From Octopus bimaculoides (lineage: Eukaryota): a DNA stretch of 64,000 nt. A program made the translations under genes and the position numbers. Of this stretch, positions 11,400-64,000 are shown in pieces (the first letter of the stretch is position 1; the number at the start of each line of letters is the position of its first letter). The notes under the pieces were generated by a model. That model did not search any database, was not told the DNA's origin, and saw only the letters and a program-made list of their open reading frames with translations. The stretch lies in assembly GCF_001194135.2 (NCBI RefSeq), contig NC_068991.1, positions 52,640,832-52,704,831 of the forward strand. Direction: 5' to 3'.

Positions 11400-12001
11400 C
11401 CCCCCACGGCGTAAATTTTAATAAAAAAATCTTACGTGGACTCCTGAGGGCCATAACGACCCCGATTGAAACCACCAAGCCAACAAACGTACATTCTTGT
11501 ATATTTACTAAGTGATTCTTCTACTACTTTTGGCCAATGTAGTGAAGTTTATGGTTCACTTGATAAAGTGAATAAAATACTACGGCCTTTTCTTTCACCT
11601 TCTTTTCTAATTCACTTTTTTAATACAGCCCGCATCTGTTGCGACATGCTTCTCATTCCAACCCTTCTATATCCGGTTATGTTTACCGAGCTGATATAGA
11701 AATTCACTTGTATTTCTGGAGTGTTAACTATTTACCTTGAGTAGCGACAATTTAAACCACGTATCCCAGGACATGATTTAAAATTCACATCTTTCACGAA
11801 AATAGATTTTATAATCGTTTATATTTACCGTGAAAATTGAATGTTTTCACTATACTTCAATTCGATATATACATATATATATATATATAAAAGAGAAAGA
11901 GGCTAATACTATAAATGTTCTGTTGTTAGCCCTACCTTGATATTCCGTCGTGACCTTAATTTGAGGACTTAATCTCGACTGAACTCGAAGTAGAAGTTAT
12001 A
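11400..12001. promoter_or_regulatory. Putative promoter / 5-prime UTR region of the IL17R-like gene, possibly bidirectional
   Basis: Repeat-free stretch locally enriched in CpG directly upstream of the ATG; a minus-strand donor (GTAAG) at 11431-11435. No TSS can be fixed from sequence alone. Confidence 0.4.
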
Positions 12002-12094
12002 ATGATTTTTGTCCTCATATTTTTGCTTACTACTCTGAATTCTGGTGAAACTACAGACTGTCCAGCATCTGGAAAAGTAACGCCTGATAATCTT
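12002..12094 (+). CDS. IL17R-like exon 1, signal peptide [31 protein letters not shown]
   Basis: ATG followed by a hydrophobic core; donor CTT|GTAAGT at 12095, phase 0; lies downstream of a CpG-richer region. Confidence 0.75.
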
Positions 12095-15000: not shown

Positions 15001-15185
15001 TATGTATTTGTATATACAGATGTATATGTGGCTATGTGGCGATCTTACGTATATGCATACATACAAAGATGTATATATATATGCATACATACGTAGATGT
15101 ATATATATATATATGTATACATACATAGATGTATATATATATATGTATACATACATAGATGTATATATATATGTATACATACATA

Positions 15186-15220
<35 letters not shown>

Positions 15221-17529: not shown

Positions 17530-17560
<31 letters not shown>

Positions 17561-32500: not shown

Positions 32501-35500
32501 ACTTCTTTCTGCTGTTAATGATTCTAAACATTCATGGACATTTCTGCTGCAAGTTTCTGACATGTGAGAGAGCATGTTGACCTCTACTGTTAAATATGAA
32601 ATTTGGTAATAAAGGTATTGAAGCTTGTTGGTGGGAATGACTCTTGTAATATTGTGGGAACAACAATCATTCAGATATTGACATGAAAATTATAACCTTA
32701 AATATTTTCTGCTTAAATTTAGTCAGCCTTGGCCTATTTTAACAACATTTACTATCTGTGTAATGTTTATGTTCACATAAATGGTTTCCCTTTACTTTTG
32801 CAGTGTGTCGTGAATGGACAACCCCAATAGATTATAGACTAAAAGAGGACAAGTTAATTGTGGATTTTGAACAAGGACCTTCAAAGTGTAATATAAAAAT
32901 GTATAAAGTAGCACTTCATTATACAAATTCAACCATTTTAAATATGGTGGCTGTCAATTCTTCCAAGGTTTGTCAAATTTCACCCTTTCAGTGATTTTAA
33001 TATTTCTCTAATTCTCAATAATAAATAAAGAAAACGTTTCTTCTTTTTCAAGTCTTTATTTCCCTATCTTGATTCTTATCCATTTAGTTTTAAATAAAAC
33101 TTATTCCCTTGCATTGTTTTACTGATTTATCTTGGTAAATTATTTTTGACTATATTGATGTTAGTTATTTTGTAATAACTATAGTAAATGTAACTTTGCT
33201 TCAATAGTCTCCATTGTCTTGTACTCTACACAGTTTTGTTATTTTCAGTAAATTGCAGCCACAAAACTAAGCATAGTGGTACCTTGACTTACGAGTATCC
33301 CAACTAATGAGTTTTTAGAGATATGAGCTATCTCTCAGCTAATCTTTTGCTTTGAGATGCAAGCTAAAATTCAGGTTATGAGCCAACTTCATATACCCCA
33401 CCACTAGTTGGCATAGCAAACGCCACAGTGAATGCTGTAACATCCACCCAGCATCCCGTGTCTTACTCACTAGCTAGACAGATATACACGTTAGCAAGTG
33501 CAAAGATCGTTAGTGGGTCGTTAATTACATGGGTGTTAAAATGCTCACTTAGTTGTTGCAGGCTACAGAAGCATCAGTGTTGCTTGCAATTGTGCTTGCA
33601 GTTATTTTGCAAAACTTTGTTTTTCCAACCATGGGTCTGAAAAAAGTGAGTGCAAAGGACAGTGGTGAGAAGCAGATGATGTGCATTGAATTAAAGAAAG
33701 AAATTATCAAAAAAACATGACCAAGGTGTGCATGTATTGACATGGCGAAACAGTACAAGCATAGCATTTCTATGATTTTCACCATACTGAAGCAGAAGGA
33801 GTCAATAAAGGCTATAATGCCAGTCAAGGGCATTAAAATAATTTCTAAAAAGCTAATGTCTATCCATGAAAATATGGAGAAGCTGCTGACCGTGTGGTTG
33901 ACGAAGAAGCAGCTCGCAGGAGATACCATGATGGAGGGTATAATCTGTGAGAACGTACAAGCTATTTACATTAATTTGCTGCAGCAGACCCCAGGCACTT
34001 GTATGGACAAGGTATTGAGCAAGCCATTTAAAGGTAGTAGGGGCTGGTTGGAGAATTTTAAAAAGAGGACCAGCATCCACTCCCTGTTCAGGCATGGTGA
34101 GGCAGCGAGAGTGGATATGTAGGTAGCTAAGGATTACCTCAAAACTTTTGCCAGAATTATAGTAGTTGAAAGATACATCCCCCAGCAAGTCTTCAACTGT
34201 GACAAGACAGGACTTTTTTGGAAGAAGATGCCAAGGAGGACTTATATAACGGTAGAGGAGAAGCAGATGCAAGGCCACAAACCCACGAAAGATAGGCTAA
34301 CCCTTGCACTGTGCACCGATGCAAGCAGCGACTGCAAGATTAAGCCACTGCTTGCTTATCGTTCGCAAAACCCCAGAACCATTAAGTCACATAAGATTCT
34401 GAAAGAAAAACTGCAGGTTATGTGGAAGGCAAATCTAAGGGTGTGGGTCACCAGGTAGTTCTCTGTGGAATGGGTGAATTTGGTCTTTGATCCTGGCATT
34501 AAGAAATATCTCCAGGAAAATAACCTACCCTTGCAAGCCCTTCTTGTCCTGGACAATGCACCTGCTCACCCACCTAACCTCGAAGATGACATCCTCGAAG
34601 GGTTCAAGTTTGTGAAAGTTCTCTACCGTCCACCCAACACCATCCCTATCCTGCAGCCCATGGACCAGCAGGAGATTTCTAATTTCAAGAAACTCTTCAA
34701 GCACTTCGAGGATGCCACTGCTTTAAGGTGACAGAGAGTACAAACCTCACCCTTCGAGAGTTCTGGAAGGACCACTATAACATCGTGATATGCCTCAGAA
34801 CTAATGATATGGCCTGGCAGGGTGTTACAAAGAGGACCTTGACCTCTGTGTGAAAGAAGCTGTGAACTGAGGTTGTGTCTGAAACGGACTTTGTAAGGCT
34901 TGAACCCGAAGCGGCAGTGATAGAGGAGATTGTATCCCTTGGCAAGTCCATGGGCCTGGACATGGATGAAGGTGACATCAATGAGCTCATTGAGGAGCAT
35001 TCCAAGGAACTGACAATGGAAGGGCTAAAGGAACTACAGATACAGCAACGTACGGAGGTTTTGCAGGAAATAGATGATGCGAAGGAGACGGAGGAGATTA
35101 TCTCTACAAATATGAAAAAGGAAATGTTGAGAATGTGTGAGAAACTTTCAGACTTTATTCAAAAGAAATGCCCAGAAAAAGTTGCATTTGGGCGTACAAC
35201 AACACTATTTAATGACACTTGCCTAACTCATTTCTGAAATACTCTGAAAGTGAGGATGAAACAGACCTTATTGGACAGGTTTTTATCGAAAACTCCTGCA
35301 GATGAAAGTGAGGAAAGCATGGTGAAAAAGGCAAAAATGAGCGAATAAGATTCAGGTATTCAGTTCAGCCTTTCTCCTCTACCTCTGTCAGCATCCTCCA
35401 AGTTGTCTGATCTCCAAAGTAAATGTTGTACATGATACTTAATAAAATCAGTTTATTGCAGTACATGCTATTGTATTGTTTTTTTATACAATAATCGTTA

Positions 35501-38500
35501 TTTATAAGTACATTTTTTGTATTTAAAAACATGTTGCATAAAAAATTGTGTTTTTTGTGGGGCCGGGAAAGGATTAATAGCATTTCAGTTGAGAAATTTG
35601 ATTTGACATACGAGTAATTTGAGTTATGAGCCCAGTCACGGAATGAATTAAACTTGTAGGTCAAGGTACCACTGTATTTAAATTGTCTTTCTATTTTTCT
35701 ATCAGATCTAGGTCTGGCTATAAAACAAAACAAAGAAAATTAGTTTGTGGCTATTTTGTTTTAGATGATGTAATTATGTAAAGAATAATTCTTTTGGGTA
35801 TATCAATACTATTGCTAAAACAAACTTTTTTTTTCCTACTATTAAATGAATAATAATTTTTGTCTTGACTAAAAATTAATTTTAACCATTGAATTCGGTA
35901 AAATATAAATCATTTTACCTAATTTAATGGCACCAGAATTATTGGTGTATCTATAAATTTTATTTTATAGTTACACCAGGTTTCAAAGATATCTCTGAGA
36001 ATTATAGATTTACTTTGAAAAATATTCAGAGTCAAATTTACAAATTTGTTTTCTTTTTTTTTTTTTTTCAGACAACCTCAAGATTAACCCATGACTTTCT
36101 TGGAATATGTCCTGGAAGCTACTACATAACTGTAAGTTATTTTCCATATTGGTCTTCATTTACCACATTTTGTTAAATTATGACATTTAAAAAGAATTCT
36201 GTTAATTTGGATAATTGCATAAATTATTGTTGAATGTGTTCCCTGAGTTTCATTCTTGTAGAATTTTCCACTTCTTCCACATTTTCAGATTCTCAGGACT
36301 TACCACTAGCTATGTAATTTTAAAAAAAAATTTGTCTCTTCCATGACAAACACTTCTACACATACTCACACATCTACTGCTATCAGTCTCTACCAAACTA
36401 GGGACTTTCTTTCTTTTCCAGAATTTGTATTAGTTCACTTGACTTTTCATTACTGTTTTATAGTGTTGTTTCTAAATTTCTTCTTTCACAGGTTCCTAAA
36501 ACCTTGCCCATTTTTTTCTTTCCTTCTCAGCCACTTACATTTTCTCTCTCCTCCTTTGCTCTTCTGATGAAGAACTCACATCTAAAATGTCAACTCTTTC
36601 TCTTCCTTCATTTCAATGTCAAACTAATACAATACTTATTAAAACTTGTCTCTCCTGTGTTGTCTTTTTTTTGGGGGGGGGTCATTACCTTTCCAATACA
36701 TGTGTGTGTGTGTGCATTGATTTTTATCTTAGTACCTCTTGTCACTTGATATGTGATTACCAAATATGTAAACTTGAAAGGGTGTTATTCTGTATTCTTT
36801 AAATTAGATTTATTTCAGGTACTGTTCACATAATAAATTCTTTGAAATAGGTGTATGGCAATAAGTTTGCTTCCCATCCACATAGTTTTAGGTTCAGTTC
36901 TACTGTGTGGCACCTTGGCCAAATATCTTCTATAGTCCAGGGCTGACCAAAACCATGTGATTCAGTCTGGTAGATGAAAATTGTAAAAAGTCCTGTGTCT
37001 GTGTGTGTTACTGTCTCCATTGTTTGATACCATCCTGCAAACAGTGTCCTTCATTTTCAGTAGTTTGTGAAAACATGTCTGGCCATGGGAAAATCTTACC
37101 TTACTTGGAAACAGGTGAGGGTTGTTGACAGGAAGGGCATCTGGCCATAGAAAATCTGCTTTGAAAACTGTTGTCCACTCCATGCAATAAAGGATGTTAA
37201 AATGATTATGATAATCTATATTTTATTTAAACTTTTGTTGTCTTGACATTAACAAAAAACTTATTCTTTTGCAAAAGTGGGAATGAAAGACTAATTGTGA
37301 TTGGTATTTGATTGGGATGATACAAACATAATAGTATTAAAAAGTATTGAGTCCTCTCTTGAAGGTTTATTGAAATATTTATTCAGTAGATGTTTTTACT
37401 CTTTTTTAAAATTTTCTTTTTAAAGGTTGAAATATTTGATGAAAATCCCTTTACCAACTGTATTTGTATAAACCTTAATGAAAAATGTGGTGAAGGCTGT
37501 GTTCGGACCCGAACCAATTCCATTGAAAGTAAGCAATACTAAAACAATGCCAAAGAAAAAACTTTATTATGTATTGTGCATTTTGCATAAAATGTTTGGA
37601 AATCAGCCACAAAGGTTAATGGGGGAGGGGGTCTGTGAGAGTTTCAGAGTAATGTATTAGGTCATCCCACAAATAATGCAGTTTTTTTTTTATACTTCTT
37701 TGACTTTTCCAGATTAAGATAGTACTTTTTCACTCTAAAGTATACCCTCTATTTTCTACAATGCTCTGCCATCTATCTGGTAGACTTGCAAGGCTCCTTT
37801 TCCAAAATTCACTTGTCCGTGACAAAAAGTACTCCTCCAGTGCTGTTCTGACCTTGTCTATAGAATTCATTTTTTCCGTTCAGATGATTTTGAAGACTGC
37901 GGAATAAATAATCAGATGGAGCAATGTCCGGTGAATATGGTGGGTCGGGCATCGTTTCCCATTCAAACTGCTCCAGCCTTGCTGTACGTGGCTGAGCATT
38001 ATCCTGATGGAAGAATACCTTTCGTCTTGAAACCAAAGATGGTGGTTTTTCTTCTAGCACTGACTTAAGCCACTGAAGCTGCTCACAGTAGATCTTTATC
38101 TTTTGGTTTGGGTTTAAAAGTTCAAAGTGGCCTAAACCTTTCATATTCCACAATACATAACAGCACCTTATATGAGTGAAAACTTTCTTTAGCCTGGGGT
38201 ACTGGTGTTTCTCCTTACCCACTGTCTTTGGCACTGGACAATTTTATAGAGAACCAGTCACTATTCAGTCCAAAAAAAGGTCCATTCAGGAGATGTGACA
38301 GCAAAGAAGAGCACACATTCACTCTCTGTGCGCAGTTAGACTCGGAAAGTTTGTGAGGAACCCATTGACTCAATTTGCTAACTTTTCCGATGGCATGCAG
38401 GTCTCAATGAATGGTTGAATGACCAAATCCAAGCTTCTCTGCTAGTTCCTCAACAGTTACAATAGGATTTTGTTCCACCAGGGTTTGTAGGATGTCCTCA

Positions 38501-41500
38501 TCGAGCTCTACAGATCTTCCAGGATGAGGCTTGTCTTCTAGGCTGTAGTTTCCACCTTGGAATTTCTGGAACCACTGTTGACACTGGCTTACGCTTATTG
38601 TCTGATCCCCGTATACTGCATTAATATTCCTCACATTTTCCATTGCATGGTTGCCTTTATTGAACTCTTAAAGCAAAATATGCTGAATATGCCCCTTTGT
38701 CACTTCCATTATAACTTTGAAAAAATAACTGTTAAAATCGTACTGCACTCTTCAAAACTTGCACTAAGAATAAGTACAAGGTGAAATTACTACCTGCTTT
38801 TATAGCAAGTTGATGCAAATAGTTTATCGTGTCCCCCTCTGACTTTTAGTTCATGCAATTGAAAAAACCACATTATTTATGGGGTGACCCAATAGTTTGT
38901 ATGATGGTGGCAGTCATGAGTAAGGTGCTTAATGGACTTTTGGGGAATAAGACAGTATATGTAATGAGAGGAATTAGGGGTGATAGGTAGCCAGCCATTA
39001 CAGCCAGTAAAGTGGTATGTACCAACAAGGAATCTTCTTATTCTTTGAATATCTTCTACTTCTATAACTAAATATAAGACTGTTTGTTAGTCAGTGTATA
39101 ATGTAAATAGTCTCAATGTAAAAAGTTCACCATTTCAGGACACTTTCTCTGATAGCGATTGCTTCTTTATAAAAGTGATGAGAGATTTTGTTCAGTGAGG
39201 GAAAAAGTCCTGGACTGGAAAGTGACGCATTTATTTCGCTGTGAAAGAACACCTGCACTTGTAGTCCATGGAGCATCTGTTTCAATGTGTTGTGGACCTT
39301 CATATAAGGTAGATGAGAAAAGTTGAAAGTAAGTGAATAACATCCAGCATGCTTTTTTGAATAGCATGTAATTTTTGCAATGGAAGTCTACGACTTAACA
39401 GAATAACCATGTACCTCCTCTACAGTAAGACACCTATTTCTGCTTCTGTCAGTCTAAGCTTTCATCATCTGTCACAAGATTACCTCCTTCAGTGCCTCCT
39501 CCCCTCTCAAAGGATATTTGTCTTGCAAGTTACTTGGTGGCCCTGCCAGTGCTAGTGCCATCTAAAATGCATCCAGTCCATACTGTAAAATAGTTAGCAT
39601 TTGGAAGGACATCCAGCTGTAAAAAGATCATACCAAAACTGATTTACCTGTGCTTGTGCCACATAAAAAGCACTTAGTCCACTCTGCAGAGTGATTGATG
39701 TTAGTAAGGGCATCCAGCCGTAAAAAAATCATGCCAAAACAGACGCTGAAGCCTGGTGTTTTCTGCCTAGCCAGCTCCTGTCAAACCATCCAACTCATAT
39801 CAGCATGGAAAGTGGACATTAAATGATGATAATGATAGAAAGTATTTGAGAAAGTAAGGTTTACTCATAAACCTCTACTTTTCTCTTAACAGCTTCCAGA
39901 GACCAGCAACACTTGAGTAATAGAGCTACTGGATTCTAATCCAGTATACATGTATTTGATAAAATAAGAGTCCACTGGAGATTAGGATGGGAGGATGGCA
40001 TATGTGAAGATAATTTTACATATTAAGGAATATAGATGGCTTAAAATGTGTAAGTGGTTTGAACATTTTGTGTAGGAATTAGGAAATCTATTCAGAGTAT
40101 CCATTGAAAATTAGTGATTCAGGGGGAAATATTTTCAAAGCTATCAGAGGTTCATATTTAAAAAAAAAAAAATTTTTTTTTTTGTTCTGGTTCAGGTAAA
40201 AAATGTTTCATTTTCAAGTGATACTGTGTAAGTTTTTATTTTATTTTGTCTTAAATTTTCTTTTATAGAGATTGGTCAATCATGCTTAGAAGTGACAACA
40301 ACTACAAGTCCTTCGACAAAAGAACCTCCAAACCCCCCAAAATTAACCATTTTCCTTGCTGTTGTTGGAGCTACGGTTGGTCTGTTACTCCTAGGTCTCA
40401 CTGTTTATTGTTTAAAGCGTAAGTATACAATTCTTCTTCAAACATATAATGAATCAGAATCACAGTATATTGGATAGATATTATCCCTTAGTGGGTTGGA
40501 TTCACAACCCCTAACTTTCTTGGATTTATATATATATATATATATATATATTTGACAGGAAGGACAACAAAAGAAAGAAAGATACCTTGATATTATGCAA
40601 ATAGAGGAATTTATCTGTAAAAATATGTGACACTTATTCTTACAGATATATATATATATATATTGATGGCTTAGCAGGCCAAAACTTTGAAGTCATTGTC
40701 AATGCTATTAAAGAATAATAAATATATACTCCATGTAAACTATTGAACAATTCTTTAGTTTAATGTAAAATTGCTTTATTATATTGTTATATTTTGGGAT
40801 GGTCTCTTTTTTTAACTAAATAACCACATGTACTATATACTTGTTCTTCACGTCAGCTTTATTATGTTTGTTGATGCTACTCCTAGTGGTGAACTAGCAT
40901 ACCTTTCAGGAAAACCTTAGATAAAATGAATCTATGGATTAAAGTTGTAGAAAGGCCAGGAACCCCCATAACATTCCTGAACTGTAGAACGTATCCATTC
41001 AAAAGGATTCCACGTACGTATAACAGCTGTATAGTATGTAAGATGAACCCACAGGTTAACTGTAAGATTAGGAATGTAGACTGTAGAATATGGTGTGCTG
41101 AGGGACAGTGCAGAAACCAGACAATAACATACATTGCAGAGACAGCATGTAGCATAGGGAAGGAAATAGGTGAGCACTGTTGGGAGCTTAAGGAGGACAA
41201 AAGCCTGTCAGTGCTCTATGAACATGCTCACTTAAAAGCTTGGTCAATAACATAGATGTTCATATATTATCAACCCATAGAAATAGACATGGCACTTAGG
41301 TTACAGAGGCCACACACATAGTTGTGTGTGTGTGGTTCTGATTATATAGCCTTAAGCAGATGAGTTGAATCTCACATAGAAGATACCTGTTTTTCAAGAA
41401 ATATTACCTGTAGGTCTGGTTCTTATTTTGTCACAGCTAGAAAAAAACCTAAGGCCATAAAATCTTGAATATTATAACAAGAGACACAACAAATGACCAG

Positions 41501-43942
41501 CAATTCATGTGGACTCAAGATTTACAAACTGATAGTAAAATGCATTTCTTACTCAGCTCTTTCACCTTTATAGTAAGCTAAAATGTGGATATCTATATGG
41601 GACATTATCTATATATATGTGTGCTTTGGTGTATGTTTGCCATAATCATCATTATTTAATGTCTATCTTCCACACTAGCATGGGTGTTTGGCAGGAGTAG
41701 GCAAACTAGATGGCTACACCAAACTCCATTTGTCTGTTTTAGCCCAGGCTATTCTTATTCTAGCAGCTACACTCTTAGAGCATCTACCCCCACTACTGAC
41801 TTGGTCACCTAGGTAATGGAAGCTATCAACTATTTCTAGTTTTTTCCCCTGGCATGTGATGGAATCTGTTTTCTGTACATCTTCAGTGTTTATTGCCCCT
41901 GTGCATCTGCCACATACAAAAACTATCTTCTCAGTTAACCTTCCTTTGTTATTTCTGCACCTCTTATGTGGCCATAGCTTACATCGGGTACATCTTATGG
42001 CGTTTCTACCTACAACTTTTCTACAGATTGAGCAGGGCCATGTACCTGAAGGGATTTGTGATTTGTCTGCCTTCCTACTTACTAAGACTTTGGTTTTTGC
42101 TAGATTGACTCTAAGATCCTTTGATTCTAGACCTTGCTTCCACACCTGAAACTTCTTTTCTAATTCTGATAGTGAATCAGTTATTAGAGCAAGGTCATCA
42201 GCGTAGGCTGCTCCTGGGAGCTCCTCTGTCTTGAATTCCTCTGTTATTACCTCGAGGACTGTGATGAATAAGAGGGAGCTGAGGACTGATCCTTGGTGAA
42301 CCCCTACTTCTATCCAAGATTCTTCACTGTATTTGTTGTCAACCCTCACCTTACTGACAGCATCCCTGTACATGGCTTGTACATATGTCACCAACCACTC
42401 ATTTATCCCTAGTTTCAGTATTGACCACCAGATAAGGGATCAGGGGACCCTGTCAAAGGCTTTCTCCATGTCATTGAAAGCCAAGTACAGCGGTTTATCT
42501 TTAGTAAGGAATTTCTCCTGCAGCTGTCTTACCAGAAATGTAGCATCAGTGGTGCTTCTCTCTAGCACAAACCCAAACTACATCTTGTCTAAATTAACGC
42601 TCTCCCTAATTAATTGGGTTATGACCCTCTCCGTAACTTTCATCATCTGATCCAACAATTTGATACCTCTGTAATTATTCATATCTAATGTTGTAGCAGT
42701 TGACTATGGTGCTGCTACTCCAGTCATTGGATATGACTCCTTCATGTATCACCTGATTGACTATATGGGTGACTAGACTATAGCCTACACCACCAGGTTT
42801 TTTAAGCATCTCAGCAGTGATTCCTGATGGGCCAGGGGCTTTCCTTGTCTTCATACCCTTAATTATCTACCAAGGTACTGTCAATTCAAATAGCCAGTCC
42901 CTCTGTTGGGTTGACATTTAGCAAACTTTTCATAATGGTATCTCCAAGTCTCTCTTTGCAGCGTCATTAAATGCAAGTGAGCCATCATCCATACAGACAC
43001 ATTTCTCTCCTATGGCATCCTGATACTCTCTCACACACTGTCTTGCAATTCAAAACACTTCAAGTCTCTGGTCCTCATGATGCAAACATTGGCAAATGTT
43101 TTTCTTATCTGTTTCTCTTCTGGTTAAGTAAACCTGTCTCCTAGATTCCCTTCTGGTGATCTGATACAATTCCCTGCTACCATCACTTTTCCAGTCCTTC
43201 CATGCCTGTTTCTTTTCCCTAATGGCCCTGTCAACTACATTGTTCCACCACCACATTACCTTAGGTCAAAAGGGGATTTTACACTAACCACAGATCTGGT
43301 CAGTAACTCTCAACAGGTTGTCCTGTAGGAACCTCCATTTGTCCTCCACATTATATGATGCTATATCCTCTTTTTTTTCATCAAAATCTTCAAGTAATAC
43401 GTCTCTAAATCTCTGACCATTCCAAAGATCCTTAAGCTTTTAGACCCTTCTTTTCCATGCTGGTCGTCTTCTGGGCAGCCATTTAGCCCTGATCTTGAAG
43501 TTACTAACTACTAACCTATGTTGTGGGATGTATTTTTCACTTGGGAAAGTTTTAGTATTTATAAGTAGCCATCTTTTCTGTTTCCTGGCAAGATTGTAGT
43601 CAATCTAACTAGTGTGCCCACCAGACTGGTAGGTGAACAGGTGACTGGCAGTTTTCCTGAAGTTAGTATTACAGATCATAAGATCATTTGTATCACAGAA
43701 TTCCAGTGGCCTGGTTTCCACCTCACTGCAGGTACCAAGTCCATTGCCACCATGTACACCATTGAAGCTCCCTGGATGTTGTCCAACATGCCCATTGAAG
43801 TCACCAGTCACAAAGAGAAGGTCCCTGTCATCCCTCAATCAGGTAGTCTGCAAGAGGATGTCATAAAATCGGTCTTTCTGTTCATTAGGTAGCCCTGGTT
43901 GTGAGGCATGGCCGAGATAATGGTTGCTAATCCACATTGCAG

Positions 43943-43995
<53 letters not shown>

Positions 43996-46141
43996 GTTAC
44001 ACTCTCTGAGCGGTTGATGTTAGGAAGGGCATGGTCAAACCTATGCCAGCATGGAAACGGATGTTAAATGATGATGATGATAACGATATATATATATATT
44101 TGTGTGTGCGTGTGTGCATGTGTATAAATAATTCATGTGTGTGTCTTTGTGTTTGTTTCCCTCCACCACCTGACACCTGGTGTTGGTTTGTCTATATCCC
44201 TGTAATTTAGCAGTTTGGCAAAAGAGACCAATAGAATAAGTACTAGACTTAAAAAATAACTACTGGGATTAATTTGTTTGACTAAAACCCTTCAAGGCAC
44301 TGCCCCAGCATGGCCACAGTCCAATAACTGAAACACATAAAAAGATCAATTTAAGAAGTATGTGACTAGGTTAGTAAAGTGAAATGTCTTTGAACATGGC
44401 TTAGAGCTATTATTGTTAGGAACGAACTATTTCTCTAGAAATTCAATAATCTTTTGTTTCAATAACTGATATCAGATTAAGATTAGCTAGGCTTGTTTTT
44501 TAAGGTCATGTTTAAAAGTTCTTGCATGTCAAATGACCACATAGCAGCTTCCCTTCCTCTGTGGATGATTATGTCTATTTTGAAATCTCACTTTTCTGAA
44601 TTCAAGTTTAATTGTGGCTGGTTTTGGAATTTTATTTTTCTGGAGCCGTGTAAATCGGACCGACTCGAGAGTTGCGAATTGTTACGGACCCGGATTTTCC
44701 AGGGCCGCCGAGAGCGCACCGGATGCCGCCCGGGCTTTGGGCTCGCCGTCGCGTCGGTGCTCGCGGCCCTCTGTTCCCGCCTTGCGTGGGGTCGTGCGGT
44801 CGTTGCACCGCGACGCGCGGCAGGCGTTCGGCCGGCGGCGAACGGTCGACTCGGAACTGGTACNNNNNNNNNNNNNNNNNNNNNNNNNNNNNNNNNNNNN
44901 NNNNNNNNNNNNNNNNNNNNNNNNNNNNNNNNNNNNNNNNNNNNNNNNNNNNNNNNNNNNNNNNNNNNNNNNNNNNNNNNNNNNNNNNNNNNNNNNNNNN
45001 NNNNNNNNNNNNNNNNNNNNNNNNNNNNNNNNNNNNNNNNNNNNNNNNNNNNNNNNNNNNNNNNNNNNNNNNNNNNNNNNNNNNNNNNNNNNNNNNNNNN
45101 NNNNNNNNNNNNNNNNNNNNNNNNNNNNNNNNNNNNNNNNNNNNNNNNNNNNNNNNNNNNNNNNNNNNNNNNNNNNNNNNNNNNNNNNNNNNNNNNNNNN
45201 NNNNNNNNNNNNNNNNNNNNNNNNNNNNNNNNNNNNNNNNNNNNNNNNNNNNNNNNNNNNNNNNNNNNNNNNNNNNNNNNNNNNNNNNNNNNNNNNNNNN
45301 NNNNNNNNNNNNNNNNNNNTATATATATATGATATGGGTTTCTTTCAGTTTCCGTCAACCAAATCTACTCACAAGGCTTTGATTGCTATTTTATTATTGA
45401 TTGTGTAAATTTATATTTTCAGGAACACTCCAAGAGAAAAGAGGGCTGTTATTTTATACAGAGGACCATTCTTACCACTGTGAAGCCATCAATCAGTTTA
45501 TATCTTTCATGGATAAGAATAAATGTAAACTAGAAGTTGCTGCTCACTTAGTGAAGGGTGATAATCCATTAAAACTGAGTTTTGAAATTCAAAAGTCTGA
45601 TTTTATAATTCTTGTTTACTCCAAAGCTCTTCACAAAAGAATTCAGGCTTGGAAAAGCAACCAAGATTACGTAAATTTTTTAAAAGAGGATAACTCTGCA
45701 CTGTTGACAACTTCTATTCTCAAGGAGCTTCAAGCAAGCAACAAACTTACCATTTGTATGTTTCCTCAGGCACCAAACTCCAGTATCAGCAGTGAATTTC
45801 CTTCAGTTAAGTGTTACACTCTTACAAAAGAGTTGAACTTACTTATTCAAGAAATCCATGGAACAGGAGTGGATCAAGAGCTTGCTGTTCTTGTCAGAAG
45901 TAACAAACTCAATCATAAATTTAACTCTTTGACAAACACAATTAAAGATGCTGCCAACTTTGAAGAAACTAGTCCCAATTGGTTTGAAGACAAATATATT
46001 TGCCCCAAGAAAATAGAGTCTTTAAATGAAATGCCTGATTACAGTGAAAAATTTGTGGATGGAGGTGAACATAGTATTTACTCTCTCCCTGTAAGTGACA
46101 TATTGGAACAGATAAATGCAAAGAATGATTCTGTAGCTTAA
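12002..46141 (+). CDS. IL17R: Interleukin-17 receptor-like (SEFIR-domain) gene, 10 coding exons, 558 aa predicted (span includes introns)
   Basis: Ten exons join with canonical AG/GT sites and consistent phases (0,1,1,0,1,0,0,1,1). The exons sum to 1677 nt, an exact multiple of 3, with no internal stop. Domain order is signal peptide, FnIII-like ectodomain, TM, SEFIR. The family-level call comes from recalled IL-17R motifs; orthology to a specific vertebrate subunit (RA or RD) is not established. Confidence 0.88.
14400..14640 (+). mobile_element. Merlin (IS1595/ISXO2-like) transposase remnant
   Basis: [39 protein letters not shown], then frameshifted VQPGSVI. This matches the recalled Merlin motifs KRKYNRGR..WVFGGIER..RDAATLLPII..I.PG(S/T)xI. 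Confidence 0.7.
14900..15219. repeat. Compound (GA)n/(CA)n/(TA)n/(TACA)n microsatellite
   Basis: Directly visible low-complexity repeats. Confidence 0.95.
15220..15622 (+). mobile_element. RTE-clade LINE ORF fragment
   Basis: [46 protein letters not shown], the same family as 43050-43256. Runs into a gap. Confidence 0.85.
15935..16101. mobile_element. Palindromic MITE (partly duplicated on the left, next to a gap)
   Basis: aacacactcaccgttaaaatttccacttattattttttattttcctaaaattttcgttgag and its reverse complement form long inverted arms. A second copy of the left arm is at 15874-15930. Confidence 0.8.
16910..17190. mobile_element. hAT-type MITE
   Basis: TIRs CAGGGGTTTTCAAAC and GTTTGAAAACCACTG; 8-bp TSD gcctaata / gcctagta. 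Confidence 0.85.
17634..17733 (+). repeat. Minisatellite, 4 x 25 bp AATTAGGTCTCAGTAAGTTAACCTC
   Basis: Three identical units and one with a single mismatch; no spacers. Confidence 0.95.
19037..19860 (+). mobile_element. LTR-like repeat related to the solo LTRs at 57314 and 58744, with an internal 124-bp tandem duplication
   Basis: Begins tgtagaaacgatcgtgcgaacc (compare tgtaatagaacgaccgtgcaaacc) and shares internal blocks with 58850-59460. The duplicated units start at 19233 and 19357. Right end not defined. Confidence 0.65.
20070..20460 (-). mobile_element. L1/Tx1-like LINE ORF2 C-terminal fragment
   Basis: [21 protein letters not shown], then frameshifted [31 protein letters not shown], resembling Tx1-clade C-termini. 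Confidence 0.5.
20640..21520 (-). mobile_element. RTE-clade LINE, apurinic endonuclease region
   Basis: Motifs [56 protein letters not shown] and SQTDYFL; frameshifted. Confidence 0.9.
21692..21719 (+). CDS. IL17R-like exon 2 (28-nt microexon, LHYSLYKTD)
   Basis: Long poly-T tract plus ACAG acceptor; donor GTAAGT at 21720. It bridges phase 0 to phase 1, exactly what exons 1 and 3 require. Confidence 0.7.
24695..24917 (+). mobile_element. tRNA-derived SINE (second family)
   Basis: A-box/B-box-like 5-prime part (gtggcctaggggtgagggtg..ggtttgattccc) followed by a conserved-looking body. Confidence 0.5.
24918..26146 (+). mobile_element. Mariner transposon, near full length, decayed
   Basis: TIR-like ends cagggtactgtaaagttcctggcttt and ggaatctttcagcactccttg-TA; motifs [28 protein letters not shown] and [13 protein letters not shown]. 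Confidence 0.92.
26288..26416 (+). CDS. IL17R-like exon 3 ([43 protein letters not shown])
   Basis: TTTCAG acceptor and GTAAGA donor; 129 nt, phase 1-1, open frame. Joins exon 4 to give AVWSANFTRLKGF. Confidence 0.85.
26780..27170 (+). mobile_element. Penelope-like element, GIY-YIG endonuclease fragment
   Basis: [46 protein letters not shown] matches the recalled Penelope C-terminal pattern. Confidence 0.75.
27230..27800. repeat. Degenerate (CA)n/(TACA)n low-complexity tract
   Basis: Directly visible; it explains the His/Thr- and Cys/Val-rich spurious ORFs here. Confidence 0.9.
28105..28217 (+). CDS. IL17R-like exon 4 ([37 protein letters not shown])
   Basis: TTTTCGTAG acceptor and GTGAGT donor. 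The LxGFxI...CRxxDxS pattern is typical of the IL-17R first FnIII-like domain. Confidence 0.88.
29837..29954 (+). CDS. IL17R-like exon 5 ([39 protein letters not shown])
   Basis: TTGCAG acceptor and GTAAGG donor; YxVxxxSLP motif; phase 0-1. Confidence 0.88.
32804..32967 (+). CDS. IL17R-like exon 6 ([54 protein letters not shown])
   Basis: TTTTGCAG acceptor and AAG|GTTTGT donor; CxxW...VxF..P..C...YxVxL pattern of the second FnIII-like domain; phase 1-0. Confidence 0.88.
33274..35674 (+). mobile_element. Tigger/pogo DNA transposon, full length (about 2.4 kb) but disrupted
   Basis: TIRs tagtggtaccttgacttacgag and cttgtaggtcaaggtaccactg-TA. CENP-B-like HTH ([14 protein letters not shown]), [26 protein letters not shown] and ILQPMDQ across frameshifted ORFs 33742-35237. 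Confidence 0.93.
36072..36131 (+). CDS. IL17R-like exon 7 ([20 protein letters not shown])
   Basis: Poly-T plus CAG acceptor and GTAAGT donor; 60 nt, phase 0-0; FxxxxPGxY motif. Confidence 0.88.
37426..37528 (+). CDS. IL17R-like exon 8 ([34 protein letters not shown])
   Basis: TTTTTAAAG acceptor and GTAAGC donor; Cys-rich CxC..C...C membrane-proximal motif; phase 0-1. Confidence 0.86.
37657..38892 (-). mobile_element. Mariner transposon, full length, decayed
   Basis: TA-flanked TIRs ttaggtcatcccacaaataatgc and cattatttatggggtgacccaa; motifs [24 protein letters not shown] and [21 protein letters not shown]. Confidence 0.93.
40269..40418 (+). CDS. IL17R-like exon 9, Thr/Pro stalk plus transmembrane helix ([25 protein letters not shown])
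   Basis: TTTTATAG acceptor and GTAAGT donor; 150 nt, phase 1-1; about 23 hydrophobic residues followed by a basic stop-transfer sequence. Confidence 0.9.
40900..41260 (+). mobile_element. Penelope-like element, second GIY-YIG fragment
   Basis: [45 protein letters not shown]. Confidence 0.65.
41650..43935 (-). mobile_element. RTE-clade LINE, large decayed copy (EN, RT, 3-prime tail)
   Basis: RT motifs [21 protein letters not shown] and NLAKTKVL; EN motifs [10 protein letters not shown] and MICNTNFRK; [14 protein letters not shown]. Confidence 0.92.
44643..44863. pseudogene. 28S rRNA-derived fragment(s), two pieces in opposite orientation
   Basis: GC-rich island. The minus strand at 44688-44730 reads gcggcatccggtgcgctctcggcggccctggaaaatccggg (compare conserved LSU tccggtgagctctcgctggcccttgaaaatccggg). 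The plus strand at 44822-44863 ends ggtcgactcggaactggtac (compare ccgacttagaactggt(g/a)cggac). Abuts a 457-N gap. Confidence 0.7.
45423..46141 (+). CDS. IL17R: IL17R-like exon 10, cytoplasmic SEFIR domain and C-terminal tail
   Basis: Long clean ORF after a TTTTCAG acceptor. It contains [11 protein letters not shown] (SEFIR box 1-like), [10 protein letters not shown] and SPNWFEDKY, which resembles the PDWFE motif of vertebrate IL-17RA/RD. Stop TAA at 46139-46141. Confidence 0.9.
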
Positions 46142-58513: not shown

Positions 58514-58743
58514 GATAAACTAAAGTACTAGTCAAATACTGGGGTGTTTTCTACACCTATAAAAGATCCTAGATCTGAATGGAATTATGATAAAAGCCCA
58601 ACCTTCTATTTATGGTTCAATATCTTGTTTCTCTTTCCTCTTCCAGATCAAAAACCTGCTGGTTCTTCACTAATTTCTTCTAGCTTTGCTTTTATTCTGT
58701 TTGAGATGATTTTGAGTAGAATTTTGCTATAATGCAATAGTTC

Positions 58744-60502: not shown

Positions 60503-60538
<36 letters not shown>

Positions 60539-60604
60539 TCAGCAGCAGCAGCAGCTGAAATCCTTGAAATTTCAAAGTTCTTGAATAACATTATCCTTGA
60601 GTCT

Positions 60605-61895: not shown

Positions 61896-62806
61896 CTTCT
61901 TTAGGTGGGGTCAACGTCAGGCTGGTACCCTTCTTTGCGATGAGTTCGTTAAACTCCTTCAATCTTTTCTCTTCAAATTTCACTTCTCTCACTTGTAGTA
62001 TATCCGTAGTCAAACTCTTTCCAGTTGCTGCCGCATAGCTACCGACTGGTTGGGTCTCCATATTTTCGTTTGTTACAACTTCGCCCATAAATGTGGAAGA
62101 AAACAATTAAGCAAAAATAACAATTCAATTAATTAACAGTAGGTACGAAAGATCTTCAACAAGCATCAACAAAGCGATTTACAAGTATACTCAAACAAAC
62201 TTCACTCAACTCTGGGTCCCAGGTCGCTTGTCACAAAAACTCTTCTCCCTAGGAACTTAGCAAGCCAGAACTTCCCATTTTATAACTGAAAAATAGACGC
62301 TAGGCTAGTCCATTAGGTTAAAGATGTGGGCAGTCCAAGTAAAGCTAGATTGATCCATCCAACCGTCACGTGGTAAACCAAAATGTGTAGTTAAAAGCGA
62401 AAAGCTTCAATGTGGGCAGCTAAAGTTCAAGATCGCTCATGCTGCCGTTATAGGATGGGCAAGATTAAAGTGCAGAACGAGTCGAAATAAATTCCTCGAG
62501 TTAACGATCCTGCTAGCGCTATTACTGTATTTTTGACATATTCACAATTCTTTAAATATGTTTTTATATATCCGGGTCTTAAACGCAGCAGCTTTTTTTA
62601 AAATTTTTATTATTATTTTTGTTGTTGTTGTTTTTCAGTCTATTTATTCTGAAGATCTTGATTCTGAGTTTATTTCGAACGATACACGCCAATATAATAA
62701 TGTTGCTGCTAGTGTTGTTACTCTCCCGACCATGAATTGACTGAAACTATTCTTATTTACCGGATCAATATTTCAATCTCGACTAAATTTGCTACAGAAA
62801 GACACT

Positions 62807-62887
62807 ATGGAACAATTTTTAACGGCACTTATTCTGACACTGTTGTTTATTCATAACTCCGCCGAGTGCCCTGAACCTAAATATATT
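62807..62887 (+). CDS. First coding exon (signal peptide MEQFLTALILTLLFIHNSAECPEPKYI) of a second secreted or membrane protein gene, probable IL17R-like paralogue
   Basis: ATG, hydrophobic core, NSAE cleavage-like site, CP, then a phase-0 GTAAGT donor at 62888. Same layout as exon 1 of the first gene, with the same AATCTCGACT 10-mer about 22 nt upstream. The rest of the gene lies outside the window. Confidence 0.6.
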
Positions 62888-63641
62888 GTAAGTATGACAG
62901 TTAATGCAACAGTTTCATCTTGGCAATTTATGTATTTTTATCTCATTATCCAGGTATTTCTGCTTCATCTTTTGAAATGACTGTTTTTTTATATTTGTTT
63001 TCTCAAGTTGAATTTTCCTTTCAAACTGAAGTAATTTATTTTATCATTTATGCTATAAATTTGACAGTCTTGAAATGAATTAGCAGCGATTTATTTCTAC
63101 GAACTTTACCTGTTTAACCATTCTATATTAATCTATATACAGTTAATAATAATACAGTTAACAGTAATCTGCAAGCAATTAATATTTGATTATACTATAA
63201 TTAAACTAATCGACCTATAATTTTATATATTATGTGTTCAATGATACTATTTAAAGAGCTCCTTTAGAAACGCAGCTCTCCAAGAGAGTGAAATACAATT
63301 GAAAAAAGGTTATGAAAATGGAAAATAGCGCCCTATTCAATAACCGTAAGTTAGAAATATAAGTTCAATCAAGCATCACTCATCTTCTTGTATTGACTGA
63401 CATCTGTTGGATGCTACCTTAACAACCACAATCTGTTACGCTTGGCCAGGCCTGCTCAAGCATCTCACCCGTGACCATCCCGTCTTTTCCCTTTGAACAC
63501 GGAGCCCAAAACTACGCATCCACAACGTGTCCTTATCTAAGGCGGTTAGGAGTAATTTGAAGGAAATTGACTGTTATTTCGAGCGAGCCTCGAGCGCTTA
63601 CGCAGGGAGAGGCCCCTTCGTTGGTGTGTTGAACTCTAAAG

Positions 63642-64000
63642 CAGTGGTCCTCAACCAGGGGCCGTATGGCACCTCTCCCAGATATATAAAAAAAATTTTT
63701 GGTTTCCTTCGTTTTAGATGTCGGAGATTACGAATATGCCCCCCCTCCAAACCTTTTCAGATTTCCCCCTCTCCCTTCCCAATTTAAAATTTTGAACCTT
63801 TTCGAAATTTTTTTAAACCACCTATTCCAAATTTAAAATGCCCACCTCAACCTTCCTTCCCCCAAATTTATAATTTTTCAAATTTCACCCCACCCCCTCC
63901 GACGGACCTGGCGCACAGTCATCCCACAAAAAACGACATTTACGATATATTTTTTTTTTCAGCAGGTTTCTCTGTTTTCGATGACGGAGATTCCGAATAT
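63642..64000. mobile_element. DNA-transposon-derived repeat (hAT-like start CAGTGGTCCTCAACC), low-quality-looking sequence; related sequence at 13340-14170
   Basis: Shares tttt(c/g)g(a/t)ttcct(a/t)cgttttag and aaaaatttcgaaaa.g.ttcaaaattttaaa with the gap-flanking sequence in intron 1 of the first gene. Confidence 0.5.

What the first reader, a model, noticed from the sequence alone, without database searches (positions are those of the whole stretch)
62775..62893. Probable tandem paralogue: second signal-peptide exon sharing a positioned 5-prime motif with the receptor gene
Seen: both genes have AATCTCGACT followed by (G/A)AA, ending 21 nt (11971-11980) and 22 nt (62775-62784) before the ATG. 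Both encode a signal peptide, then NS(G/A)E..CP, and end exon 1 at a phase-0 GTAAGTA donor. Both are on the same strand, 51 kb apart. Inference: this is a tandem IL-17R array in which a 5-prime UTR or core-promoter element has been conserved while the coding sequence diverged, suggesting receptor diversification parallel to the ligand expansion.
Basis: partly seen in the sequence, partly recalled or inferred. Interest (0 to 1): 0.7.

Follow-up and report, generated by a model that had tools for sequence, protein, structure and literature searches.

The report
Start of a neighbouring receptor paralogue
The flagged stretch is the first coding exon of an already annotated Octopus bimaculoides gene (LOC106875973), a tandem duplicate of the IL-17-receptor-like gene beside it whose signalling (SEFIR) exon has decayed; the shared 10-base motif is the best-kept remnant of their common 5' end, and its function is unproven.

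Summary
AATCTCGACT occurs only twice in the window, 21 and 22 nt before two ATGs. Each ATG opens a signal-peptide exon that ends in a phase-0 GTAAGTA donor.

The window is O. bimaculoides CM046611.1:52,640,832-52,704,831.
- Gene A (12002-46141, 10 exons, 558 aa) is LOC106875974. It carries Ig_ILCR1 and SEFIR domains.
- The flagged exon (62807-62887) is exon 1 of LOC106875973 (XP_014779803.1, 340 aa). Its other nine exons lie beyond the window. Exons 2-8 match gene A in length.

So the tandem paralogue is real, but it is already in RefSeq. In this assembly its SEFIR exon is wrecked: a ~113-nt deletion causes a frameshift and stop after 19 aa, there is a second stop, and homology breaks off. Gene B is therefore a SEFIR-less (decoy-like) receptor or a pseudogene.

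The two exon-1 modules are anciently diverged homologues (~60% identity in intron 1, dS>1), while the gene bodies are 80-89% identical. The motif is the most conserved spot in the 5' flank across ten family members (P~0.003). It is exact in only six, and only TYARTC...GACTRAA is invariant. An equally long identical run occurs in intron 1.

Its role is unresolved: promoter-proximal or 5'-leader element, splice-acceptor region, or neutral relic. Interest is low to moderate.

The parts
62807..62887 (+). First coding (signal-peptide) exon of gene B = LOC106875973; 27 codons, MEQFLTALILTLLFIHNSAECPEPKYI.
   Evidence: It is identical to residues 1-27 of RefSeq XP_014779803.1 (P0018). The exon model was rebuilt exactly from L005, which overlaps window 52807-64000 with 0 mismatches. 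It is 23/27 identical to the N-terminus of O. sinensis P0006.
62888..62894 (+). Phase-0 splice donor GTAAGTA of gene B intron 1. The intron is 14.6 kb; exon 2 lies beyond the window at L005 24682-24709.
62775..62784 (+). 10-mer AATCTCGACT, copy B. It is embedded in TCAATCT (62773-62779; fits the loose initiator consensus YYANWYY) followed by GACTAAA (62781-62787).
62788..62797 (+). TTTGCTACAG: a 3' splice-acceptor-like site ending 9 nt before the ATG. The equivalent AG is the annotated acceptor in three homologues (O. vulgaris P0010 and P0020, O. bimaculoides P0015).
   Evidence: Its use in gene B itself is not known.
62689..62700 (+). CCAAT box followed by a TATA-like ATATAATAA, about 86 nt upstream of the 10-mer. 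It forms part of the ~120-nt 5' block shared by all B-type paralogues.
   Evidence: The same block sits inside a 94-bp unit that is tandemly repeated 3.8 times in L003 and is also repeated in L004.
62524..63127 (+). Block conserved at 79% with the exon-1 region of O. sinensis LOC115217573 (-283 to +320 relative to the ATG).
62935..63065 (+). 5' part of gene B intron 1 that is collinear and homologous (~60% identity) with gene A intron 1.
11971..11980 (+). 10-mer AATCTCGACT, copy A. It is embedded in TTAATCT (11969-11975) followed by GACTGAA (11977-11983).
   Evidence: It reads AGTCTCGACT in the O. vulgaris and O. sinensis orthologues.
12002..12094 (+). First coding (signal-peptide) exon of gene A = LOC106875974 isoform X2; 31 codons, followed by the donor GTAAGTA.
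   Evidence: The exon is conserved in O. vulgaris P0017 and O. sinensis P0024.
12109..12271 (+). 5' part of gene A intron 1 that is homologous to the B-type intron 1. It includes a second exact 10-mer, CTTTCAAACC, shared with L003 and L004.
21692..46141 (+). Gene A exons 2-10: 21692-21719, 26288-26416, 28105-28217, 29837-29954, 32804-32967, 36072-36131, 37426-37528, 40269-40418 (TM) and 45423-46141 (SEFIR, stop).
   Evidence: model. It is 100% identical to P0016. Pfam finds Ig_ILCR1 (5e-20) and SEFIR (25.1 bits, cutoff 23).

Best explanation
**What is there**
- Window 62807-62887 is the first coding exon of Octopus bimaculoides LOC106875973 (gene B). Gene B is the next gene in a small array of lineage-specific IL-17-receptor-like genes. 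These encode a signal peptide, a family-specific N-terminal region, an ILCR1-type Ig-like domain, a TM helix and a SEFIR domain.
- Gene B lies 16.7 kb downstream of its paralogue LOC106875974 (gene A), on the same strand.
- Gene B keeps an intact 321-codon ectodomain plus TM reading frame, but its SEFIR exon has decayed. It can at most make a signalling-dead, decoy-like receptor; otherwise it is a young pseudogene.

**History of the two genes**
- The two exon-1 modules (5' flank, signal-peptide exon and the first ~170 nt of intron 1) are true but old homologues: ~60% identity, exon-1 dS>1.
- The rest of the two genes is 80-89% identical, introns included. That pattern points to a recent duplication or to gene conversion that stopped short of exon 1.

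**The 10-mer**
- It is the best-preserved piece of the shared ancestral 5' module.
- Most likely (about 0.4) its invariant parts, TYARTC and GACTRAA, belong to the proximal promoter or 5' leader of the signal-peptide exon. They sit about 70-86 nt downstream of a CCAAT/TATA-like block.

**Shown:** gene identity, paralogy, SEFIR decay, homology of the exon-1 modules, and the conservation pattern of the motif.
**Inferred:** any regulatory function of the motif, and the position of the transcription start site.
For: **Gene identity**
- P0018 residues 1-27 equal the translated exon.
- L005 overlaps the window end with 0 mismatches in 11,194 nt.
- Exact exon models were rebuilt for six family genes.
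- Exon lengths 28/129/113/118/164/60/103 are identical in A and B.

**Family assignment**
- Pfam finds Ig_ILCR1 (72-77 bits) in A, B and their homologues.
- Pfam finds SEFIR at 24.7-27.7 bits (cutoff 23) in A, P0006 and P0005, but not in B.
- ILCR-1 is a C. elegans IL-17 receptor (PMC7190641).

**SEFIR decay in B**
- Searches show a 3-nt deletion, a ~113-nt deletion that leads to TGA, an extra TAG, and loss of homology after L005 51318.
- No other SEFIR-coding DNA lies within 10 kb on either strand.

**Mosaic divergence**
- Gene bodies of A and B are 74-89% identical by blastn, introns included.
- dS for A against B is 0.22-0.33 in exons 2-9, against more than 1 in exon 1.

**Homology of the exon-1 modules**
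- Intron-1 local alignments are collinear, with z up to 8.7 and 0 of 300 shuffles as good.
- A weak collinear nhmmer hit supports this.

**Motif conservation**
- 9 of 14 columns are invariant across ten genes, against 27 of 158 overall (permutation P=0.003).
- The in-register exact match has P=0.0019 under a non-homology null.

**Promoter-like context**
- A CCAAT plus TATA-like block lies 68-86 nt upstream in the B-type genes and in the O. vulgaris A orthologue.
- Similarity among B-type paralogues starts abruptly at about -112 to -126.
- The annotated upstream exons of four homologues are not conserved with one another and are absent from the window.
Against: **Against a special role for the motif**
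- It is exact in only 6 of 10 genes. There are substitutions or an indel in the A orthologues, in L007 and in LOC106875972, and within each exon-1 type it is no better conserved than its flanks.
- At ~60% identity, runs of 10 are expected by descent alone, and one more is present in intron 1.
- The invariant-column test is partly circular, because the aligner anchors on the identical run and the sequences are related.

**Against a promoter reading**
- No TSS data are available.
- Four gene models splice upstream exons into acceptors at -9 or -41. In those transcripts the exon is internal.
- The CCAAT box is mutated to CTAAT in gene A itself.
- YYANWYY is a loose consensus, expected about once per 256 nt.

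**Against the IL-17R label**
- SEFIR scores sit only just above Pfam's threshold.
- No PDB relative is detectable by sequence.
- The AlphaFold model was too poor to test the fold (pLDDT 40.7).
Confidence: 0.75

Rival explanations
1. The motif is part of the 3' splice region (branch site plus acceptor) of a facultative 5'-UTR intron. On this reading GACTRAA is a branch-point-like CTRAA. The AG 11-12 nt downstream (CTACAG|AAAG in B, GAAGTAG|AAG in A) is the acceptor through which upstream non-coding exons join the signal-peptide exon.
For: - Three annotated homologues splice exactly into this AG, checked at the DNA level: L003 10001-15 to 17897, L004 10001-27 to 14828, and L009 ~14114 to 30666.
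- The GACT-to-AG spacing is 17 nt in both A and B.
- GACTRAA is invariant in all ten genes.
Against: - In 48 genuine introns of this family, CTRA occurs near the acceptor in only 11. It always lies 31-55 nt upstream and never at -12.
- Real acceptors have T-rich tracts (mean 11.7 pyrimidines of 15). The B site has 8 and the A site has 6, which is the family minimum.
- In the L002 and L007 genes the -9 AG is lost. The L002 model uses an acceptor at -41 instead, which makes the motif exonic.
- The upstream exons are not conserved between genes.
Confidence: 0.25
2. The 10-mer has no function of its own. It is a neutral remnant of common descent that happens to be unbroken in the two O. bimaculoides copies.
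For: - The A-type and B-type modules are homologous at ~60% identity. At that level about one exact run of 10 is expected per ~400 aligned nt.
- A second exact 10-mer (CTTTCAAACC) occurs in intron 1.
- Four of ten genes carry changes inside the 10-mer, including an indel.
- Local alignment of the upstream 140 nt is only weakly significant (z 0.8-3.7).
Against: - Invariant columns cluster at the motif (P=0.003).
- GACTRAA and TYARTC survive in both exon-1 lineages even though exon-1 dS is above 1.
- The position relative to the ATG is kept: 18-22 nt between motif and ATG across the family.
Confidence: 0.35
3. Gene B is a pseudogene, not a functional SEFIR-less receptor. On this reading its open ectodomain frame persists only because the inactivation is recent or because gene conversion from neighbours keeps repairing it. 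This question is separate from that of the motif.
For: - The last exon carries multiple lesions.
- The ectodomain dN/dS of B against its O. sinensis counterpart is 0.75-0.81.
- Within-species A-B dS (0.22) is lower than between-species A-B dS (0.33-0.38). This hints at gene conversion.
Against: - Nine exons (961 nt) carry no stop or frameshift and have canonical splice sites. The ~250 nt of surviving exon-10 sequence carries at least four indels or rearrangements.
- The intact gene A also has an ectodomain dN/dS of about 1, so a high ratio is the family norm and not a sign of decay.
- RefSeq models it as protein-coding.
Confidence: 0.5

Closest known systems
IL-17 receptor family (SEFIR-domain receptors), in particular the invertebrate ILCR-1 type (C. 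elegans ILCR-1; mollusc IL-17R isoforms)
   Same: - Type-I membrane layout: signal peptide, extracellular beta-rich domains including a Pfam Ig_ILCR1 domain, a single TM helix and a cytoplasmic SEFIR domain (gene A, P0006, P0005).
- The ligand family is known to be expanded in O. bimaculoides, with 31-36 IL-17 genes (PMC8353272).
   Different: - The proteins are very divergent. SEFIR scores are only 25-28 bits, and no relative is detectable in the PDB by sequence or by profile.
- The N-terminal ~160 aa of the long forms match no Pfam family.
- Homologues found here were all from Octopus species.
- Ligand binding is untested.
- Gene B lacks the SEFIR domain altogether.
Decoy or truncated cytokine receptors that lack the signalling domain (for example IL-1R2; my own knowledge, not tested here)
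   Same: Gene B retains the signal peptide, ligand-binding-type ectodomain and TM helix, with only a 19-residue cytoplasmic tail.
   Different: - In gene B the truncation comes from visible decay of the SEFIR exon (deletions, stops, breakpoint).
- The counterpart in O. sinensis is intact.
- Expression and function are unknown, so it may simply be a pseudogene.
Tandemly duplicated immune-receptor gene clusters evolving by unequal crossing-over and gene conversion
   Same: - Three family genes lie within 160 kb in O. bimaculoides, and there are larger arrays in O. vulgaris and O. sinensis.
- Exon structure is identical across the family.
- Gene bodies are 80-89% identical, while the exon-1 modules are only ~60% identical.
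- Ectodomain dN/dS is about 1.
   Different: Nothing unusual for this class of cluster. The mosaic pattern (old exon-1 module, young gene body) is the only feature worth noting.
Core-promoter elements: initiator (YYANWYY / TCAKTY) with an upstream CCAAT box
   Same: - TCAATCT, TTAATCT, TTAGTCT and TCAGTC all fit the initiator consensus.
- The positions that vary among family members are the degenerate positions of that consensus.
- A CCAAT box lies 68-86 nt upstream.
   Different: - No TSS evidence is available.
- The consensus is loose.
- The invariant GACTRAA just downstream is not a described core-promoter element as far as I know.
- Several gene models transcribe through the site from upstream exons.

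Membership tests
IL-17 receptor-like (SEFIR) receptors | Cytoplasmic SEFIR domain | tested here: met
   For gene A: Pfam PF08357 at 25.1-26.9 bits against a cutoff of 23. The same domain is found in P0006 and P0005. The margin is small.
IL-17 receptor-like (SEFIR) receptors | Cytoplasmic SEFIR domain, tested for gene B (the flagged gene) | tested here: not met
   - P0018 has no SEFIR hit.
- Its last exon has a ~113-nt deletion, a frameshift stop after 19 aa, a further stop, and loss of homology after L005 51318.
- No other SEFIR exon lies within 10 kb on either strand.
IL-17 receptor-like (SEFIR) receptors | Extracellular receptor domain of the IL-17R / ILCR-1 type | tested here: met
   Pfam Ig_ILCR1 (PF23608) scores 72 bits in gene A and 74 bits in gene B, against a cutoff of 27.
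IL-17 receptor-like (SEFIR) receptors | Type-I topology: N-terminal signal peptide and a single TM helix | tested here: inconclusive
   - Hydrophobic N-termini and one hydrophobic segment ([23 protein letters not shown] in A; KLTIFFAIISVMIGLLLLVLSFY in B) can be read directly from the sequences.
- The AlphaFold model has a helix at residues 295-322, but at low confidence.
- No dedicated signal-peptide or TM predictor was available.
IL-17 receptor-like (SEFIR) receptors | Binds an IL-17 family ligand and signals through an Act1/CIKS-type adaptor | not testable with these tools
   This needs binding and signalling assays.
Tandem paralogue of LOC106875974 | Adjacent, same strand, homologous protein and conserved exon-intron structure | tested here: met
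   - 16.7 kb separates the stop of A (46141) from the ATG of B (62807), both on the + strand.
- The two share a 10-exon structure with identical lengths for exons 2-8.
- Protein identity is 58-63%.
- Introns are alignable at 74-89% identity.
Initiator-type core promoter | Sequence match to YYANWYY / TCAKTY | tested here: met
   The match is present in all ten family genes. The consensus is weak, expected about once per 256 nt.
Initiator-type core promoter | Coincides with a mapped transcription start site | not testable with these tools
   - No CAGE, RACE or UTR annotation was available.
- Four homologous gene models start further upstream.
Branch site / 3' splice region | yUnAy motif followed by a pyrimidine tract and an AG at a typical distance, as in the gene's other introns | tested here: not met
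   - CTRAA matches 4 of 5 positions, but the branch A would sit at -12.
- In 48 real introns of the family, CTRA is found only at -31 to -55 (11 of 48).
- Real acceptor tracts are much more pyrimidine-rich.
Branch site / 3' splice region | The downstream AG is used as an acceptor | tested here: inconclusive
   It is used in annotated models of three homologues. Its use in genes A and B is unknown, and the AG is lost in L002 and L007.

The most novel reading that the evidence does not exclude
- Octopuses carry a lineage-specific, tandemly expanding family of ILCR-1-like IL-17 receptors that parallels their IL-17 ligand expansion.
- Within that family, LOC106875973 has been converted by decay of its SEFIR exon into a membrane-bound decoy that damps IL-17 signalling.
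- The TYARTC-N(1-2)-GACTRAA element, kept in both ancient exon-1 lineages while gene bodies are homogenised by gene conversion, is a family-specific cis element (core promoter or 5' leader) that co-regulates the array.
Probability: 0.12. Interest if true: 0.55.

Novelty: new member of a known kind. Interest (0 to 1): 0.25.

Why it matters
- O. bimaculoides is known for a large IL-17 ligand expansion (PMC8353272). The receptor side has not been described in the papers I could search.
- This locus shows that the receptors are also multi-copy, clustered, fast-evolving (ectodomain dN/dS about 1) and subject to domain loss. That is useful context for invertebrate cytokine biology.
- Even so, the flagged gene is already in RefSeq, and tandem duplication of immune receptors is commonplace.
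- The motif's function is unproven, so the practical value is modest. It offers a candidate decoy receptor and a short candidate cis element to test.

Tried and rejected
- **Exon-1 peptide search.** A second search padded with intron read-through found nothing, although P0018 holds the exact peptide. That was a limit of the word index, not evidence of absence.
- **Contig look-ups.** P0005 and P0002 were not on record. I went through cluster members instead.
- **nhmmer.** A B-type exon-1 profile did not detect the gene A 5' flank. It gave only a weak, collinear intron hit (E=2.1).
- **Conserved upstream exon.** A blast of the L003 and L004 upstream exons found only simple repeats.
- **Structure.** AlphaFold on the 10-sequence family alignment gave pLDDT 40.7, too poor for a fold search, so none was run.
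- **PDB.** Sequence and profile searches found nothing meaningful.
- **Pure chance without homology.** Rejected on the in-register P of 0.0019 plus the collinear intron homology.
- **Transposon origin of the motif.** Rejected. It occurs once per gene, always at the same position, and nowhere else in about 500 kb of fetched loci.
- **Gene A's real exon 1 hidden in an assembly gap.** Rejected. RefSeq isoform X2 and the O. vulgaris and O. sinensis orthologues all use the MIFVLIFLL exon.
Full report
**1. The observation**

- AATCTCGACT lies at 11971-11980 and 62775-62784 on the + strand.
- In copy A it is followed by GAA and in copy B by AAA.
- It ends 21 nt before the ATG at 12002 and 22 nt before the ATG at 62807.
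- Each ATG opens a short hydrophobic exon: 31 codons ending ...NSGETTDCP...NL, and 27 codons ending ...NSAECPEPKYI.
- Each exon is followed by GTAAGTA in phase 0.

The 10-mer has only these two copies in the window on either strand (0.05 expected).

I shuffled the 140-nt upstream region of gene A while keeping its dinucleotide content. An exact run of 10 or more, in register within 3 nt, arose in 38 of 20,000 trials. At any offset it arose in 65 of 2,000 trials. Against a null of unrelated sequence the match is therefore unlikely to be chance.

**2. What the two genes are**

*Gene A.* The last large ORF (45401-46141) carries a SEFIR domain. Using Octopus homologues as guides, I rebuilt gene A as 10 canonical exons from 12002 to 46141, encoding 558 aa. 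This protein is 100% identical to RefSeq XP_052827759.1, O. bimaculoides LOC106875974 isoform X2 (P0016). Pfam finds Ig_ILCR1 (72 bits) and SEFIR (25.1 bits, cutoff 23). ILCR-1 is a C. elegans IL-17 receptor (PMC7190641).

*Gene B.* The flagged exon translates to exactly the first 27 residues of XP_014779803.1, LOC106875973 (P0018, 340 aa). The locus fetched for that protein (L005) is CM046611.1:52,693,638-52,754,804. It overlaps window 52807-64000 with no mismatch in 11,194 nt. The window is therefore CM046611.1:52,640,832-52,704,831.

L005 supplies what lies beyond position 64000: nine further exons that reproduce P0018 exactly with GT-AG introns. The exon lengths are:
- B: 81/28/129/113/118/164/60/103/165/62
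- A: 93/28/129/113/118/164/60/103/150/719

*The wider family.*
- A third member, LOC106875972 (L004), lies 21.7 kb beyond gene B on the opposite strand.
- Another pair of models lies on CM046630.1 (L002).
- O. vulgaris and O. sinensis have at least four or five loci each, mostly on one chromosome.

**3. Gene B has lost its SEFIR domain**

P0018 has an Ig_ILCR1 hit but no SEFIR hit. I aligned its last exon with gene A and with the O. sinensis counterpart. The alignment shows:
- a 3-nt deletion;
- a deletion of about 113 nt that shifts the frame into TGA after 19 cytoplasmic residues;
- a further in-frame TAG;
- a 6-nt deletion;
- complete loss of similarity after L005 51318.

No assembly gap lies at these points, and no other SEFIR-coding DNA lies within 10 kb on either strand. 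The O. sinensis gene is intact.

Exons 1-9 of gene B are open and have canonical splice sites. Gene B is therefore either a signalling-dead, decoy-like receptor or a young pseudogene.

dN/dS does not decide between these. For the B ectodomain against O. sinensis it is 0.75-0.81. For the intact gene A against O. vulgaris it is 1.0-1.1. Fast ectodomain evolution is the family norm.

**4. Relationship of the two 5' ends**

The gene bodies of A and B are alignable, introns included, at 74-89% identity from about 165 nt upstream of exon 2 onward. dS is 0.22-0.33.

The exon-1 regions are far more diverged.
- blastn finds no match between them.
- The signal peptides are about 30% identical.
- Exon-1 dS is above 1. 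With only 28 codons this estimate is noisy.

They are nevertheless homologous. The first ~170 nt of intron 1 align collinearly at about 60% identity, with z up to 8.7 and 0 of 300 shuffles as good. A weak nhmmer hit fell at exactly the expected offset.

Two old exon-1 lineages therefore exist.
- The A-type (MIFVLIFLL...) is also used by the O. vulgaris and O. sinensis orthologues.
- The B-type (ME(Q/R)FL...) is used by at least seven genes.

The rest of each gene has been duplicated or homogenised much more recently. Within-species A-B dS (0.22) is lower than between-species A-B dS (0.33-0.38). This fits gene conversion that stops short of exon 1.

**5. How special is the 10-mer?**

I collected ten exon-1 regions: window A and B, plus L001-L004 and L006-L009.

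| Genes | Form of the motif |
|---|---|
| Six genes | AATCTCGACT, exact |
| Both A orthologues (O. vulgaris, O. sinensis) | AGTCTCGACT |
| L007 | AATCT-GACT (1-nt deletion) |
| LOC106875972 | AGTCGTGACT, with conserved flanks |

Only T-Y-A-R-T-C and G-A-C-T-R-A-A are invariant.

*Evidence for constraint.* Across all ten genes, 9 of 14 columns at the motif are invariant, against 27 of 158 in the whole 150-nt flank (permutation P=0.003). It is the most conserved spot in the 5' flank.

*Evidence against.*
- The aligner anchors on the identical run, and the sequences are related, so that test is partly circular.
- At ~60% identity about one exact run of 10 is expected per 400 aligned bases.
- A second such run (CTTTCAAACC) occurs in intron 1.
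- Within each exon-1 type the motif is no better conserved than its flanks.

My estimate is roughly even odds that the motif is under selection of its own.

**6. What the motif might do**

*(a) Proximal promoter or 5' leader.*
- TCAATCT, TTAATCT, TTAGTCT and TCAGTC all fit the initiator consensus. The positions that vary are its degenerate positions.
- A CCAAT box followed by a TATA-like string lies 68-86 nt upstream in the B-type genes and in the O. vulgaris A orthologue. In gene A itself it reads CTAAT.
- That block is part of a 94-bp unit repeated 3.8 times in tandem in L003, and also repeated in L004.
- Similarity among B-type paralogues begins abruptly at -112 to -126. That is expected if the duplicated functional unit starts with a compact promoter.

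*(b) Splice region of a 5'-UTR intron.*
- Three homologues are annotated with upstream exons spliced into the AG 9 nt before the ATG. I verified this on the DNA.
- A fourth homologue (L002) splices into an AG at -41.
- GACTRAA resembles a branch site, and the GACT-to-AG spacing is 17 nt in both A and B.

*Points against (b).*
- The branch A would sit at -12. In 48 real introns of the family, CTRA occurs only at -31 to -55.
- Real acceptors are far more pyrimidine-rich than these two sites.
- The upstream exons are not conserved between genes.
- In L002 the motif is exonic.

*(c) No function.*

I weight these roughly 0.4, 0.25 and 0.35. Transcript 5'-end data would settle the question.

**7. 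Comparison with what is known, and verdict**

The literature I could search reports the IL-17 ligand expansion in O. bimaculoides (31-36 genes), but nothing on its receptors.

The genes found here are already in RefSeq and UniProt as uncharacterised, or as 'ILCR1 Ig-like domain-containing', proteins.

They are very divergent. There is no PDB relative by sequence or by profile. The AlphaFold model from the shallow family alignment was unusable (pLDDT 40.7). The IL-17R label therefore rests on the two Pfam domains.

- Its main inference, a tandem paralogue, is correct but already annotated.
- 'IL-17R array' needs the caveat that the second gene has lost its SEFIR domain.
- The 'conserved promoter/UTR element' is plausible but unproven, and less invariant than claimed.

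This is an ordinary immune-receptor cluster with two mildly interesting features: a candidate decoy receptor and a mosaic evolutionary history.

Noticed in passing
L005 51106-51318 (CM046611.1 around 52,744,743-52,744,955), beyond the window: The last exon of LOC106875973 is a decayed SEFIR exon: deletions of 3, ~113 and 6 nt, two stops, and a homology breakpoint. The O. sinensis counterpart is intact.
   Followed up: yes
window 12002-12271 versus 21527-46434; L005: The history is mosaic. The exon-1 module of gene A is only ~60% identical to that of gene B (exon-1 dS>1), while the rest of the genes is 74-89% identical, introns included (dS 0.22). Within-species A-B dS is lower than between-species A-B dS, which suggests gene conversion that excludes exon 1.
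   Followed up: partly
L003 17503-17859; L004 14478-14706: A 94-bp unit carrying the CCAAT/TATA-like block is tandemly repeated (3.8 copies in L003) immediately upstream of the motif in the short-form paralogues. The window genes have a single copy.
   Followed up: partly
window 15569-15619 and about 16820-16954 (+): RefSeq isoforms X3 and X1 of gene A use alternative first exons inside intron 1. These exons lack a signal peptide ([17 protein letters not shown]... and [15 protein letters not shown]...). The first abuts an assembly gap (15623-15873). They are probably transcripts without receptor function, or annotation artefacts.
   Followed up: partly
gene A and gene B coding sequences (window; L005; L001; L006): Ectodomain dN/dS is about 1 between O. 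bimaculoides and O. vulgaris/O. sinensis orthologues (1.03 for A, 0.81 for B in exons 2-9). For the SEFIR exon it is 0.40-0.65. This indicates rapid or diversifying evolution of the putative ligand-binding part.
   Followed up: partly
CM046611.1 (window, L005, L004) versus O. vulgaris OX597824.1 (L009, L003, L006) and O. sinensis CM016869.1 (L001, L008): Gene order differs between species. In O. bimaculoides, A and B are adjacent on the same strand, 16.7 kb apart. In O. vulgaris and O. sinensis the closest counterparts are 290-360 kb apart and convergent. dS of B against its O. sinensis counterpart (0.21) is twice that of A against its orthologue (0.11), so strict orthology of B is doubtful.
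   Followed up: no
window 9689-10081 (+), 33742-34731 (+), 37809-38643 (-), 41714-42394 (-): There are transposon fragments in and around gene A: mariner (Transposase_1, HTH_48), Tc5/pogo-type (HTH_Tnp_Tc5, DDE_1) and a reverse transcriptase (RVT_1). Copies of the RT element recur in L001 intron 1 and at window 61288-61894.
   Followed up: partly
L009 3001-14114 spliced to 30666; P0020: The O. vulgaris model CAI9729972 fuses about 150 unrelated N-terminal residues, from exons 16-27 kb upstream, to the receptor's signal-peptide exon through the -9 acceptor. The SEFIR half of the same gene is annotated as a separate protein (CAI9729973). This is probably a chimeric or split gene model.
   Followed up: partly
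L007 (O. sinensis VCDQ01005828.1): The family member LOC115232311 lies entirely within the span of a gene for a BAAT/acyl-CoA-thioesterase-like protein (Bile_Hydr_Trans, BAAT_C). It is either a nested gene or an over-extended gene model.
   Followed up: no
window 13400-13935, 15623-15873, 23228-23327, 44864-45319, 53277-53357, 57866-58169: Assembly gaps (runs of N) interrupt introns 1, 2 and 9 of gene A and the A-B intergenic region. L005 has further large gaps in gene B intron 1. Unseen exons or regulatory sequence there cannot be excluded.
   Followed up: no
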